A DNA stretch of 63,193 nucleotides, filler included, from Hausera hauseri (lineage: Eukaryota): the NCBI GenBank assembly GCA_046269625.1. It is 12 parts of 12 records of this genome, joined end to end, with 100 filler letters (N's around TTAATTAATTAA, not from the genome) between each part and the next. Parts side by side here need not be neighbours in the genome. Positions count along the whole stretch, not along the records: positions 26,822 to 32,112 come from JBJURY010288613.1; 11 more parts are not named here. The stretch is one strand, 5' to 3'. Below the pieces are notes generated by a model. That model was not told the origin of the DNA and searched no databases. It saw only the letters and a program-made list of their open reading frames with translations. Within the stretch, counting starts at the first letter, position 1. The number at the start of each line of letters is the position of its first letter. The position numbers and the translations under genes are program-made. Positions 26,822-32,399 of the stretch are shown piece by piece.

Positions 26822-26898
26822 CCAGTATTGCGTCGAAATACGCGTCCCATTCCGGTTCATTTCCGACATCTGGAAGTCCAGCACCTACCAAAGCTACG
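26822..26898. repeat. 77-bp terminal direct repeat (identical to 32036-32112)
   Basis: CCAGTATTGCGTCG...CCAAAGCTACG is the first and last 77 nt of the contig. This is the typical k-mer overlap of a circular assembly path. Confidence 0.97.
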
Positions 26899-29399
26899 CT
26901 CGTTTTTGCACATTTTCTCGAATTTCTTTCAACCTGGGCTGTATTTCCTTCATCTGCGTAGTCCGGAAACCTACTCCATTTCCACAAGCATATTGAATCA
27001 TTTTCACTAAGTCGCCGAATTCATTGGAATCAATGAGTCTTTTTGGTGATAATCCGTTAATTCGATAATTACATCCTTTTGCCATATTCGTACAAATTCT
27101 CGCTTATTTTTGATTTCTGATTCGGTAAAAGCATATTTGTTTCGGTAGACTTCGAATTCTTTTGTTAGTTCATCTAGCCTCGTTGCTCTTTGCTCTGTTT
27201 TGATGCACGTTTCTTCGACTTGCTGTAATTTTGGCATCAGCTGTCTCATCCACTCGTCATTAATCTCCGCCATTTCTACCAAAAAGTAGGCTAACCCGTA
27301 CATTTCATTTATAATTTTTGAGTTGGGATCTATGGCATCTGACAATTTCTTTACAAACTTAGATTTCTGAAAACTAATATGCTGATCATTTCATATTTTT
27401 ATCAATTTGGTATGGAAATTCTGATTTGATCCGGCCATCCATTCTTGTGGTTTATGCAAAAATCTTATTACATCTATTAACGTAGTTCCGTGTTCCGGAC
27501 AAATGTCTAGGGTCTCAATATCTTGAATTGAGATCTCTTCGATAGGTTTTTCTGTCAGACGTTGAACTCCTTCTAGTCGGACGTTTCTTAATTTTGGATA
27601 GAAATTGCATTTCATATTCCGTTTTTCCGTAAAGTTCGTTTCTTCAATCATTTTATAAATTTTTTCTAATAGCGTTGCTTTTTGCTTCTTTTTCATAAAA
27701 TTAAGTCGCCTTAATGCTTCAAATCTCGTTCGGATGTATATTTCGGCTAGTATCGCCTCTAAATTTTGTGCGCTTTCTTCTAATTGTCTCTTTACAGATG
27801 GCTGGCTTCCTGGAAATTTTTTCTTTCGGTCTTCTACTATTTTGCTCAATCTCATTACTAGTTCGGACCATTTCGATAACTGATTGACAATTATTGGTTT
27901 AGCCATTATAGCCTTATCTAGCATTTTGTATGCGTCCTTCAATTCGTCATCATAATCCCGCTGATATATCTAAATTCGTCTTTATATTCATCGAATTCTA
28001 AGATGCATGCTGTTACTACGTATTTAGTTTCTTCATTATTTTGAGACATAATTCGATTTCTCAGACTATAAATCTGTACTCGCTTTTCATTTTCTATTTT
28101 GATCCGATTTTCCAAGCTCGTGTATTGTTTAGGTACAGCAAATGCGATTTTTATCATTTCCATTAAAGGAAAAATATCTATTGGGTCTATATCCAATATT
28201 TCTAAATCGATATTACTTCGGTTGTTGACTGATTTTTTCTAAGTTGGTTAATTATCGTGTAGCGAATGTCATCCACCATATGCTCTAAATTGTGGACTAC
28301 TCTCTTCCGTTTTGGATTCGCTTCCAACGCTGATAACAACGTTTGCGCTTTAGTGACTTTTACGTCGACACTGTCTTCATTCTTATTCCATTCTTCCAAA
28401 AACTCGACTCCACTTTTAATCCATGAATCTAGTTCATGTTTCCATTTTAACAATGTTTCTGCTGATACCCCTTCAGGTTGTCTTGCGTCGATTGCTTCAG
28501 CAAACTTTCCTTCGCTACGTAGTTTCAAACTTTTATATAACTTCTCGGCGAATTGTTGTTCTTTCCCGGATATGTCTACTTGTTCGCTGATCTCCTTGAG
28601 CCTTTCTAAATTTTGTTGTAATATTTCGGGCTCTAGACACTTAATTCGCATTTTCTTTAGCTCATCGGCGTTCTTCCATGAACGTCGAATTTTCCATTTT
28701 TTTGGATCAAAATCGTCAGTATTTTCCATTTCTTCCTCACTAATAGGAAGTAGACAGATCTCGTTAATCTCATTAGCTGATCCTATGGACTCGGCGGTTC
28801 CGACAGGCGTGATTGATCCGATTTCTGGTTTATTCACATTATGTCCTATGTCATCTATAACGATGTTCGGACTACTTGTTCCTTTAATTTTCTCTTTAGT
28901 TATTTGTGAACGTGAGCAACTTCTACGTTTCGTCTTAAATGAAGGGCTACGGCCTCTATTTTTCGTAATTATAAGTATTAATGGTTCCATAAATTCCCGT
29001 TCTGCAGTATCGTCCTCAACATACTTATCTACTTTTTCAACCGTGAACTCAGGCGCTACGTCTAAGTCGACTTCCGTCGATGGGCCTGGTTTATCCGATG
29101 GTTTATTATTCGTGGGAACATTCTTTTTCCGTGTCATGTCGCTTCGTTTTGGTGCTATTGCCTGCTCAGAGTCAGTTTATGGTTCTACAAAACCATGATA
29201 TACTTCTAGTAGTATTAGTTTATCTCTGTACTCTTTTCTAGCTGTCAATATTTGTGGATTACAAAATTCAGGCTGAGCGTCTAGAAACTTCCGTAAATCT
29301 TGTATATCGATAATAGTGCCTGTATCTCCACTAACACCATACTTCTCATCTAAATTTTCATTAGTTCTGATCATACTAGTATCTATTGGCTCAGTAAAT

Positions 29400-30449
29400 G
29401 AAACTCTACGTGGGTTTGGACATGATCTTGAAATGTGTCCTTCTTTCCGCAAGTGAAACAAAATGAGTTCCCGTTTCTACCGACTCTCTGTCGACCGTCT
29501 TCGTTTACCGGCGATTTAGATCTATTTGTACTCTTATTATACTAGGTTGCCGCACTGTCAGCGTTTCGTCGATTATCACTATTTCGGCTATCGCCGTTTT
29601 GATTCGAGTAGTTTGAGCCTCTATAATTTCCTATATTCCCATCGCAGTTAAAATCTGGTCGGTTCGTACTAGTAAAATTATTGCCTCGGCTATACCTATA
29701 ACTGTCGTTATTATTTCGGTTCCCATAATTTTTGTTATTCGTATATCGTCTATCATCTCTTCCATGATTATCATTCCGATTTATGTCCGTGCGATCACTT
29801 CGATCATTATTTCTGTCGATTCTATCATTATGTTTGGCATATCTGTGAAGTGCCATTTCTAAGTCTTGAGCTAACCGTAGAGTCCCTTCAAAGTTTTCCG
29901 GCCTAGCCAAAATTAATTGCTTAAGCAAATCTCGTGACCAAATACCATGGATTAATTAAGTCGTCATCATGACATCTAGATCTGGCGGTGTTGCCTTTTC
30001 TGCGGCATCGCGTTCCGCATCTGTTTTCGCTCTAGCTACGTTGGCTATACGCAGTGTGTTTATATAACTATTGGCAAGTTTCTTCAACGCAAATGCGAAT
30101 TGCGTTACTGATTCACCTTTTGTTGTACTCTATTCTGAAATGCCATAAGCTTTTGTTGCGGCGTTACTGTCGGTAATAATTTACGGTTTAATGCTCCTAC
30201 CAGAGAGGACCAAGATTTCTTCTCGTCATTAGTAAGTTTGCTATATGCGTCAGCAGCTAGATTTTTCAAATATAACGACAAGGGTTTAATCATTACTTCA
30301 GGAGTAAGGCTAGCACCTTCTGCGTGCAATTTGCAAGTTCTCAAGAATTCATTAAGCCCGTCTGGGTCTCCATCATATGCCGGCAAGTTTAAAGAATCGA
30401 AGGTGAAGATGTCTAGTTTCTGCGCTACTGGTTGGTTGTCTGCTGCCAT
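29400..30449 (-). pseudogene. Retrotransposon Gag (capsid-like region, N/D/R-rich linker, CCHC zinc knuckle)
   Basis: LPAYDGDPDGLNEFLRTC...YLKNLAADAYSKL...WSSLVGALNRKL...FQNRVQ. The knuckle CFTCG(K)EGHISRSC is split by a 1-nt frameshift near 29445. Confidence 0.85.
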
Positions 30450-30788
30450 GTTAATTACGTTATTTGTTGCTAAATCTACTTAATTTATTTTATGTACCTC
30501 AAGTGGAATTTTAAACTGTTTATTTTGCGCGACAACGTCTAGTTTGATTCTATTCTCGGAATTTGAAAGTTTATCTACTTTTTGTGTATCTCTATAAATA
30601 TTTCGACGTGTCTCACGTATAGGTGAATTGTCTTTTAATATATGGTTTACTTTTGACTTACCAATGCTTGTTCTCTATTAGAGTATGCGTTACTTATCCC
30701 CCTATTTGATTTTATTTTTGAAATATATCAATTTAATTGGTGTGTAATTATTTAGCTCTTAAAAGTAAAGTCTAGCGAGGTACATACT

Positions 30789-30805
30789 TCCTGCTAGGGT
30801 CGCCA
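30789..30805 (-). promoter_or_regulatory. tRNA primer-binding site (tRNA-Arg-like)
   Basis: TGGCGACCCTAGCAGGA starts 2 nt after ...TATATAACA. Its complement ...TCCTGCTAGGGTCG-CCA looks like a tRNA acceptor/T-stem end. Confidence 0.8.
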
Positions 30806-30807
30806 AA

Positions 30808-30852
30808 TGTTATATATTGGGGTGGCCCTTATTCAACGCCCACTATATAACA
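30808..30852 (-). repeat. 45-bp mini-LTR candidate with 14-bp imperfect terminal inverted repeats
   Basis: Minus strand TGTTATATAGTGGGCGTTGAATAAGGGCCACCCCAATATATAACA. The ends match at 13/14 positions as inverted repeats. Confidence 0.7.
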
Positions 30853-32399
30853 GAATTACACTCAAGATTATTTCAATTCTTATGCAGTTCGGTCTATCGT
30901 AATCGAATAGACTGAATGTACCTTACCGATTTTAATTATTATGCAGGTAATGCGTGCGGTCCTGTGCTGATAATTGAAATGTGCTAAGCTTATAGCTCTA
31001 TTGATTTCGTTCTCTCGATTAGGGTTTATTTTGACAGCTAAGTATAGTAATACTTTCCTTAGTTCTTCATTTGTGTTTTCTACCATGATTTTATCGATTA
31101 CTGCTTCGTCAGTTAAGCTGCTTTTTGATCATTTAAAACGTGAACTTCTTATCAATCTAGCTGCTTCGAAAATTATCTTTTCTTTCTCATCCAGTATATC
31201 ACCTCGAAGGCTTGAATAATTTACAATTCGTACCAAGTTCTTCAATAACTCGTTTAACTCTTCATTATCTGTGCTAAAGATCGGAATTGACATTTGTTTC
31301 AATTCTCTAATCAATTCTACGTTATAATCTACTTCTCACGTTTTCCTAGGCCGACCAACTGGACGTTTCGGCCTTGGCCCTTTTGTTGCTATTTCGCTCA
31401 ACGGTACTAAATTGATGTCATATTTTTCCTTATCCTCGTCTGTTTGCAAATACGCAAAATACAAGGCAGCATTTCGGACTCCCATAATTTGTCCTACGCA
31501 TTGTTCTGCTTTAACTTTGCGTGTGGCTTCTTCTTTCGTCTGTTCATTTGCTATCGTTACTACTACTGGGTTTGTTTCGCCTGGAATAATCCCGACGTCT
31601 ATCAATTGCTCTAAGTCGTTGAGTATTCTACCTCTAAAATAGAATCTGTAATTTAACTCGTTTTTCCCGCCGTTGTTTATCAGCCATTCTCTTACATTTC
31701 TTACGTAAGAATATTTAGTTAACACTCATTCTTTTTCGTCCATCCATTCGGATGATACCATCATTTTTATCGTCATTTCAGGTTTAGCCCTCAAGATTTT
31801 AGCATACTTTCTTATTAAAAGTTTCGGCACCGTGCTATAAATCGTATTCTCACTAGACAATATAGTCAAAGTTGTTATAAGTTGTCGTAACTTATTTCAG
31901 TAATATTTACGTTAATTAGTTCAATTAAATCTTTTTCAGTTAGTGCTGAATTCAGGAGCATCGCCACATCGAATCTCCTGTTCTGTGGGCACATTTCTAT
32001 CTCATTTATTTGTACTGGAGTCATGGGCTTTTCGGCCAGTATTGCGTCGAAATACGCGTCCCATTCCGGTTCATTTCCGACATCTGGAAGTCCAGCACCT
32101 ACCAAAGCTACGNNNNNNNNNNNNNNNNNNNNNNNNNNNNNNNNNNNNNNNNNNNNTTAATTAATTAANNNNNNNNNNNNNNNNNNNNNNNNNNNNNNNN
32201 NNNNNNNNNNNNATAACAAATCGAGAAAAAACCTTTTCATATATTCCTCAGAGTTGTAAATTTTTTAAAAAATTATCAAAGATTAAACCCAAAGGAAAAT
32301 TAAAATGTTGGTTTAAAACTAAGAAAAATCAATTTAAATCTCTTACTATTCGATTGAGTATCAAAACTTTCACAGAAGGACAAAGTTGTGATTCTGTAT

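What the first reader, a model, noticed from the sequence alone, without database searches (positions are those of the whole stretch)
30789..30852. 45-bp self-complementary mini-LTR directly followed by a 17-nt tRNA PBS
Seen: TGTTATATAGTGGG...CCCAATATATAACA-TT-TGGCGACCCTAGCAGGA. The TG..CA ends, terminal inverted repeats and 2-nt PBS offset are canonical LTR architecture. However, 45 bp is far shorter than typical LTRs and mostly folds into one hairpin. No clear polypurine tract precedes it, so it could instead be only the U5 end of a longer LTR overlapping the ORF end. Inference: a minimal integrase-attachment and priming cassette shared between head-to-tail units.
Basis: partly seen in the sequence, partly recalled or inferred. 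Interest (0 to 1): 0.8.

Follow-up and report, generated by a model that had tools for sequence, protein, structure and literature searches.

The report
Retroelement LTR end, hairpin and tRNA primer site
The hairpin and the tRNA-matching site beside it are real and mark where a long terminal repeat (LTR) meets the primer-binding site in a decayed, very abundant retrotransposon that has no reverse transcriptase of its own. Nothing shows that the 45-bp hairpin is the whole repeat, or that units really sit head to tail.

Summary
- A 45-nt hairpin at 30852->30808, with 14-nt arms (13/14 paired) and a 17-nt loop.
- A TT spacer.
- A 17-nt site (30805->30789) exactly complementary to a natural tRNA 3' end. 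Most other copies carry an 18-nt version.
- A 339-nt leader and a gag ORF follow, with the remains of a CCHC zinc knuckle further on.

The unit is a high-copy, diverged eukaryotic repeat. Pfam finds no protease, RT, RNase H or integrase in any reading frame.

The "head-to-tail" look comes from an exact 77-nt overlap of the piece's ends. That is the mark of a circular assembler path, which a collapsed LTR-internal-LTR repeat produces.

Whether the LTR is only 45 bp could not be tested, because no copy with flanks was reachable.
- Internal evidence leans towards a somewhat longer LTR of about 80-200 bp:
  - the codon signal fades about 150 nt upstream of the hairpin, beside a purine tract;
  - an 18-nt direct repeat, out of frame, lies in between;
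  - the TG start follows automatically from the hairpin's CA end.
- In favour of 45 bp:
  - no other TGTTATA-like terminus exists in the unit;
  - the frame stays open to 27 nt before the hairpin.

Verdict: an ordinary LTR/primer-site junction of an unusual pol-less element. The mini-LTR remains possible, at about 0.2.

The parts
30808..30852 (-). 45-nt hairpin ending in CA: the 3' terminus (U5 end) of the LTR. 14-nt arms, 13/14 paired, 17-nt loop. Contains TATATA, AATAAG and TATATAA motifs.
   Evidence: (I7).
30806..30807 (-). TT spacer between the LTR's CA and the PBS.
   Evidence: read directly.
30789..30805 (-). 17-nt primer-binding site, exact complement of a tRNA 3' end including CCA. 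It is 18 nt in most other copies.
   Evidence: exact tRNA match; majority insertion after 30788; Arg-like 3' nine bases.
30450..30788 (-). 339-nt leader between the PBS and the gag ATG. One subfamily lacks 30454-30756.
   Evidence: (joint 30453->30757, depth 120).
30108..30449 (-). N-terminal part of gag, a Retrotrans_gag-type capsid region, starting at ATG 30449.
   Evidence: phmmer hits; hits P0004 and P0005 carry PF03732; 37% identity over 99 aa to P0004.
29545..29955 (-). Rest of gag plus an Asn/Arg/Asp-rich low-complexity linker.
   Evidence: The same layout is seen in P0006.
29420..29460 (-). CCHC zinc knuckle, split by a frameshift near 29440.
   Evidence: CFTCGKK in one frame, GHISRSCP in the next; weak zf-CCHC hit.
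26822..29176 (-). Broken open frame with no recognisable domain (the cargo). It continues at 32035 because the piece closes on itself.
31005..32035 (-). Last part of the broken frame with a clear codon signal. Includes a weak ubiquitin-like match and an AT-hook-like GRPRK motif.
31005..31016 (-). Purine tract GAGAGAACGAAA, 152 nt upstream of the hairpin, where the codon signal fades. It is a candidate polypurine tract, but TG does not follow it.
30853..31004 (-). Stretch with a weak codon signal, although the frame stays open to the TAA at 30883-30885. Probably the upstream part of a short LTR. It holds an 18-nt direct repeat (30870-30887 and 30929-30946, spacing 59) and a small hairpin (30892-30912).
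26822..26898 (.). Exact 77-nt copy of 32036-32112: the end overlap of a circular assembly path. The unit is 5214 bp.
   Evidence: D1.

Best explanation
The 64 bases are the inner edge of the 5' LTR of a Ty3/gypsy-like retroelement, read on the minus strand. They comprise three parts:
- the last 45 bp of the LTR, which form an inverted repeat ending in the conserved CA;
- the TT dinucleotide;
- a 17-nt primer-binding site (18 nt in most copies) for a host tRNA, probably an Arg tRNA.

Shown: the element is a high-copy, diverged, decayed repeat that keeps gag with a CCHC knuckle, has no protease, RT, RNase H or integrase, and carries about 1100 codons of unknown cargo.

Inferred:
- It must be copied by the enzymes of an autonomous partner.
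- A tRNA anneals at the PBS, and DNA synthesis runs through the hairpin region to the RNA 5' end.
- The hairpin's outer arm is the U5 attachment end for integrase. The stem may also help place the primer, as the U5 inverted repeat next to the PBS does in avian retroviruses.
- The LTR is most likely short but longer than 45 bp, starting somewhere between about 31004 and 30887.
- The head-to-tail appearance is a circular assembly path made by collapsing the two LTRs of many copies.
For: - The CA-TT-TGG layout lies upstream of a same-strand gag gene.
- The PBS is the exact complement of a real tRNA 3' end. Most copies extend the match to the canonical 18 nt.
- The 3' nine bases are shared only with Arg tRNAs in a table of metazoan tRNA ends.
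- The gag region is homologous to Retrotrans_gag-bearing proteins.
- No pol domain appears in any frame of either strand.
- More than 10,000 contig pieces at 85-100% identity in one run show a high-copy repeat.
- The exact 77-nt end overlap points to a circular assembly path.
- For an LTR longer than 45 bp:
  - The frame-0 codon signal is positive from 31725 to about 31000, then near zero.
  - A purine tract sits at that transition.
  - An 18-nt direct repeat with spacing 59, not a multiple of 3, lies between there and the hairpin. Only 6 of 2000 shuffles score as well, and no other adjacent blocks in the unit do.
  - No purine tract abuts the hairpin.
Against: - No second LTR copy, insertion junction, target-site duplication or solo LTR was seen, so the LTR's 5' edge is not mapped.
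- TG follows none of the upstream purine tracts.
- No other TGTTATATA-like terminus exists in the unit, even allowing 3 mismatches.
- Frame 0 stays open to 30883, 27 nt before the hairpin. An open run of about 39 codons from 31000 has about a 5% chance.
- The codon test uses 20-codon windows and is noisy.
- The host tRNA is unidentified. The exact tRNA match comes from a phage-like metagenome contig and is absent from 185,579 prokaryote species genomes.
- No autonomous partner was found.
Confidence: 0.5

Rival explanations
1. The 45-bp hairpin is the entire LTR, a minimal U3-R-U5: its two arms are the two integrase attachment ends, its TATATA at positions 4-9 is the promoter element, and its AATAAG in the loop is the poly(A) signal. 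That leaves an R of only a few to about ten bases.
For: - The termini are a 14-bp inverted repeat (13/14 paired) running TG...CA.
- It is the only such hairpin in the unit.
- No other TGTTATATA-like site could serve as a more distant LTR start.
- The reading frame stays open to 27 nt before it.
- TATA-like and AATAAG motifs lie inside it (read directly).
- Position 30838 in the hairpin loop is covered by 99 contigs, one of the highest counts along the unit.
Against: - The TG start follows automatically once a hairpin ends in CA.
- No polypurine tract abuts the hairpin.
- The codon signal fades and an out-of-frame direct repeat appears upstream.
- To my knowledge no LTR this short has been described. 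Short-LTR Mag-lineage elements in Culex still have 119-304 bp (PMC3286476).
- Depth along the unit varies from 22 to 34,734 for unrelated reasons, so it cannot single out the hairpin.
Confidence: 0.22
2. There is no LTR. The 5.2-kb units really lie head to tail, or exist as circles. A longer-than-unit transcript supplies the terminal redundancy, as in pararetroviruses and their endogenous tandem arrays, and the hairpin is an RNA or DNA signal next to the PBS.
For: - The piece closes on itself.
- Only about 430 nt of the unit lie outside the open frame.
- A distant gag relative (P0006) is likewise one giant ORF filling a 5.5-kb contig.
Against: - An end overlap of exactly 77 nt is the expected artefact of a de Bruijn assembler on a collapsed LTR repeat (own knowledge of assemblers).
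- CA-TT-TGG is the signature of an LTR/PBS junction.
- The unit encodes no RT.
- The run holds thousands of diverged fragments, as a dispersed old repeat would give.
Confidence: 0.08
3. Coincidence. The tRNA-like 17-mer and the hairpin have no role in priming, and the unit is not a retroelement.
For: - There is no RT and no second LTR.
- The fold z-score is only -1.8.
- The 21-base search pattern used for the tRNA match is expected about once by chance in a collection of that size (own estimate).
Against: - Both pattern hits are genuine tRNA genes, with CCA following although CCA was not in the pattern.
- The position (2 nt after CA, 339 nt before a gag ATG) is the canonical one.
- The gag homology is significant.
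- The majority variant lengthens the match to 18 nt.
Confidence: 0.05

Closest known systems
Non-autonomous LTR retrotransposons that keep gag but lack pol (for example the maize Zeon partner of Cinful; own knowledge, not checked here)
   Same: It has an LTR end, a tRNA PBS and a gag with a zinc knuckle. It has no RT or integrase, is high in copy number, and presumably depends on an autonomous partner.
   Different: It carries about 1100 codons of same-strand cargo with no detectable relatives. No partner element or second LTR was seen. The gag family is rare: 5 hits among 1.84 billion representative proteins.
U5 inverted-repeat stem beside the PBS of avian sarcoma/leukosis viruses (own knowledge)
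   Same: A stem-loop occupies the last bases of U5 directly upstream of the tRNA primer site. The predicted RNA fold also pairs 8 nt upstream of the hairpin with 8 nt downstream of the PBS, like a U5-leader stem.
   Different: No experimental or covariation support exists here. The flanking 8-bp pairing is not statistically supported (z = -1.2) and is deleted in one subfamily. Here the stem reaches the very last base of the LTR.
Short-LTR Ty3/gypsy elements of the Mag lineage
   Same: These are compact elements of about 5 kb with short LTRs and tRNA-Ser, -Leu or -Arg primer sites (PMC3286476, Table 1).
   Different: Their LTRs are 119-304 bp and they encode pol. Membership cannot be tested without an RT.
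TRIM / LARD-type non-autonomous LTR elements (own knowledge)
   Same: They also lack pol and depend on enzymes supplied in trans.
   Different: Those elements have no coding capacity and have clearly duplicated LTRs of about 100 bp or more. This unit is about 90% open frame.
Endogenous pararetrovirus tandem arrays (own knowledge)
   Same: A unit-length repeat that closes on itself, with a tRNA PBS and no visible LTR pair.
   Different: Pararetroviruses encode RT and use a tRNA-Met site. Here there is no RT, the site is Arg-like, and it is preceded by CA-TT.

Membership tests
LTR retrotransposon (Ty3/gypsy-like) | Two direct long terminal repeats flanking the internal region | tested here: inconclusive
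   The piece holds only one copy of the hairpin/PBS region. It closes on itself through a 77-nt overlap, as expected if two LTRs were collapsed.
LTR retrotransposon (Ty3/gypsy-like) | LTR termini TG...CA with short inverted repeats | tested here: inconclusive
   The 3' CA is present at 30808. The only matching TG terminus is the hairpin's own left arm. The true 5' edge is unmapped.
LTR retrotransposon (Ty3/gypsy-like) | tRNA-complementary PBS within a few bases of the 5' LTR | tested here: met
   The 17-nt site is an exact complement of a natural tRNA 3' end, 2 nt after CA. It is 18 nt in most copies. The host tRNA was not available.
LTR retrotransposon (Ty3/gypsy-like) | Polypurine tract directly upstream of the 3' LTR | tested here: inconclusive
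   None abuts the hairpin. Purine tracts lie 152 and 320 nt upstream, and TG follows neither.
LTR retrotransposon (Ty3/gypsy-like) | gag with capsid domain and CCHC knuckle | tested here: met
   Homology to PF03732-bearing proteins. A CCHC knuckle is present but frameshifted.
LTR retrotransposon (Ty3/gypsy-like) | pol: protease, RT, RNase H, integrase | tested here: not met
   There is no Pfam hit in any stop-free piece of at least 45 aa on the minus strand, nor in plus-strand ORFs. At best it is a non-autonomous derivative.
LTR retrotransposon (Ty3/gypsy-like) | Target-site duplication at insertion sites | not testable with these tools
Pararetrovirus-like tandem or circular unit | Encodes RT; tRNA-Met PBS; unit-length circle or tandem array | tested here: not met
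   There is no RT. The PBS is Arg-like, not Met. Circularity is seen only as an assembler overlap.

The most novel reading that the evidence does not exclude
The whole LTR of this family is the 45-bp palindrome. That would be the smallest LTR known, packing both integrase attachment ends, a TATA element and a poly(A) signal into one hairpin with an R of about ten bases or fewer. It would serve a pol-less gag-plus-cargo element that may also persist as LTR-sharing tandem units.
Probability: 0.2. Interest if true: 0.65.

Novelty: new member of a known kind. Interest (0 to 1): 0.3.

Why it matters
If the LTR is short but ordinary, this is one more non-autonomous LTR retroelement, and the finding is routine annotation.

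Two things keep it mildly interesting:
- The element keeps gag and a long frame of unknown function without any pol, in a gag family with almost no relatives in 1.84 billion representative proteins.
- Very little non-coding sequence is left for an LTR.

If the 45-bp hairpin proved to be the complete LTR, it would set the lower limit for what reverse transcription and integration need in cis.

Tried and rejected
- Copies with flanks:
  - Exact-pattern scans for the hairpin-end + PBS motif found nothing in metagenome, prokaryote-genome or viral contigs.
  - Protein-guided scans of viral contigs found nothing.
- Reads: the single read-laying run gave only short Logan contigs of about 200 nt, built with 31-letter words. 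These break at every branch and cannot show LTR/flank junctions. Their depth swings from 22 to 34,734 along the unit, so I rejected depth as a measure of LTR length.
- A candidate long LTR starting at TGTTAAC (31724) after a purine tract was rejected. Most copies have another base at 31724, which removes the TG, and the stretch is clearly coding.
- A tRNA gene or other known RNA at the site: none.
- Tandem repeats: none.
- Bacterial promoter and terminator scan: uninformative.
- Cargo function: Pfam, PDB sequence search, word search and two Atlas searches were all blank.
- The 310-aa plus-strand ORF at 28266-29198 is a Ser/Phe/Leu-rich mirror of the minus-strand frame, not a gene.
- Literature string searches for the PBS and the hairpin arms found nothing relevant.

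Full report
**What is in the sequence**

The piece (26822-32112) is a 5214-bp unit plus an exact 77-nt repeat of its start at its end (D1). There are no Ns and the piece is 63% A+T.

The element reads on the minus strand. In minus-strand order the features are:
- A 45-nt stretch with 14-nt arms (13/14 complementary) and a 17-nt loop, at 30852->30808 (I7).
- TT.
- The 17-mer TGGCGACCCTAGCAGGA, at 30805->30789.
- A 339-nt leader.
- An ATG at 30449 that opens a gag-like frame.

**Is it more than chance?**

- This is the only hairpin of its quality in the unit, and 3 of 100 dinucleotide shuffles have any. Its folding energy is modest: -10.5 kcal/mol, z = -1.8.
- I scanned metagenome contigs for the 17-mer's complement joined to a generic T-loop. 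The scan hit two contigs, and in both the hit is the 3' end of a tRNA called by ARAGORN. CCA follows in both, although it was not in the pattern.
- That tRNA is an Asn(GTT) tRNA on a phage-like contig that also carries glutaredoxin and a tRNA-Leu gene. It is absent from 185,579 prokaryote species genomes. So it shows that the 17-mer has the form of a tRNA 3' end, not which host tRNA is used.
- A table of metazoan tRNA 3' ends in a preprint supplement lists GGGTCGCCA only for Arg(CCG) and Arg(UCG/UCU). The best match to our 12-mer is 10/12 (10.1101/2023.10.26.564294, supplement 1).
- In the one public run that holds the repeat, most copies have an extra base after 30788, which makes the complementarity 18 nt.

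**What the element is**

- The gag N-terminal piece finds only five proteins at E <= 1e-3 among 1.84 billion representatives. Two of them carry Pfam Retrotrans_gag, one of these with zinc knuckles and the other with an integrase zinc-binding domain. Identity to the nematode protein (Ditylenchus destructor) is 37% over 99 residues.
- A CCHC knuckle is present but split by a frameshift near 29440.
- Beyond it, the frame runs round the closed unit to a TAA at 30883, through many stops and frameshifts. No Pfam domain is found in any piece on either strand, and word, PDB and Atlas searches give nothing. There is therefore no protease, RT, RNase H or integrase.
- The run holds more than 10,000 contig pieces at 85-100% identity, so this is an abundant, diverged repeat and this copy is decayed.

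**The head-to-tail claim**

An end overlap of exactly 77 nt is what a de Bruijn assembler leaves when a path closes on itself (own knowledge). A high-copy LTR-internal-LTR element gives such a path because the unique flanks are pruned. With multi-k assembly this can happen even for a repeat shorter than 77 nt. The piece therefore says nothing about the real arrangement of units in the genome.

**Is 45 bp the whole LTR?**

This could not be tested directly, because no copy with flanks was obtainable. Logan contigs are too short and break at branch points.

Indirect evidence for 45 bp:
- The arms are the only TGTTATATA-like termini in the unit.
- The frame stays open to 27 nt before the hairpin.

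Indirect evidence against:
- The TG start is implied by any hairpin that ends in CA.
- No purine tract abuts the hairpin.
- A codon-usage log-likelihood, trained on the element's own long open pieces, is positive from 31725 to about 31000 and then near zero.
- A purine tract (31016-31005) sits at that transition.
- Between there and the hairpin lie an 18-nt direct repeat with spacing 59, so out of frame (6 of 2000 shuffles), and a small hairpin.

This looks like about 80-200 nt of regulatory, non-coding LTR sequence, with the 45-bp inverted repeat as its U5 terminus. However, TG follows no upstream site, so the start is not placed.

**Mechanism (inferred)**

- A partner element's RT extends a tRNA annealed at the PBS through the hairpin region.
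- The CA end is the integrase substrate.
- The stem may assist primer placement, as the U5 inverted repeat does in avian retroviruses (own knowledge).
- An 8-bp pairing that brackets the hairpin and PBS appears in the RNA fold, but it is not significant and one subfamily lacks it.

**Verdict**

The LTR-end/PBS reading is well supported. The 45-bp 'mini-LTR' and the sharing between tandem units are unproven, and I put the mini-LTR at about 0.2.

Noticed in passing
window 26822-26898 and 32036-32112: The two ends of the piece overlap exactly over 77 nt, so the contig is a closed assembler path of 5214 bp. This is not evidence for tandem units.
   Followed up: yes
protein P0006 (1618 aa, ENA contig of 5485 nt): This distant gag relative (39% identity over 88 aa) is a single giant ORF. 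It runs gag, Asn-rich linker, CCHC, ubiquitin-like stretch, coiled coil, then a Monjiviricetes-type (rhabdovirus/bornavirus G-like) fusion glycoprotein (Pfam E = 5.5e-82). It has no pol and fills a contig about the size of ours. Its DNA could not be fetched.
   Followed up: partly
window 31560-31800 (-): Weak ubiquitin-family match (Pfam E = 0.069), interrupted by a TGA at 31726-31728 and followed by an AT-hook-like GRPRK motif near 31350. P0006 has a ubiquitin-like-looking stretch too, but at a different position in its ORF.
   Followed up: no
window 30870-30887 and 30929-30946; 30892-30912: An 18-nt direct repeat (16/18 identical, spacing 59) straddles the ORF's stop codon. A small 6-7-bp hairpin lies between the copies, about 40 nt upstream of the main hairpin.
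   Followed up: partly
window 30454-30756: One Logan contig (depth 120) joins 30453 directly to 30757, so a subfamily lacks almost the whole leader between the PBS and the gag ATG.
   Followed up: no
window 28266-29198 (+): A 310-codon open frame lies antisense to the 311-codon minus-strand ORF. Its product is Ser/Phe/Leu/Cys-rich with no Pfam hit. It is a mirror effect of the Lys/Glu-rich sense frame, not a gene.
   Followed up: yes
window 29545-29955 (-): An Asn/Arg/Asp-rich low-complexity linker sits between the gag capsid region and the zinc knuckle. P0006 has the same feature.
   Followed up: no
L001:1365-2220 and L002:87-162: These metagenome contigs carry tRNA-Asn(GTT) with encoded CCA, tRNA-Leu(TAA) and a glutaredoxin gene. 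They look phage-like, and the tRNA's 3' end is absent from GTDB species genomes.
   Followed up: partly
window 30838 and 30788: This copy differs from most copies in the run. Most have T instead of G at 30838 (plus strand, in the hairpin loop), and most have an extra G after 30788, which lengthens the PBS to 18 nt.
   Followed up: yes
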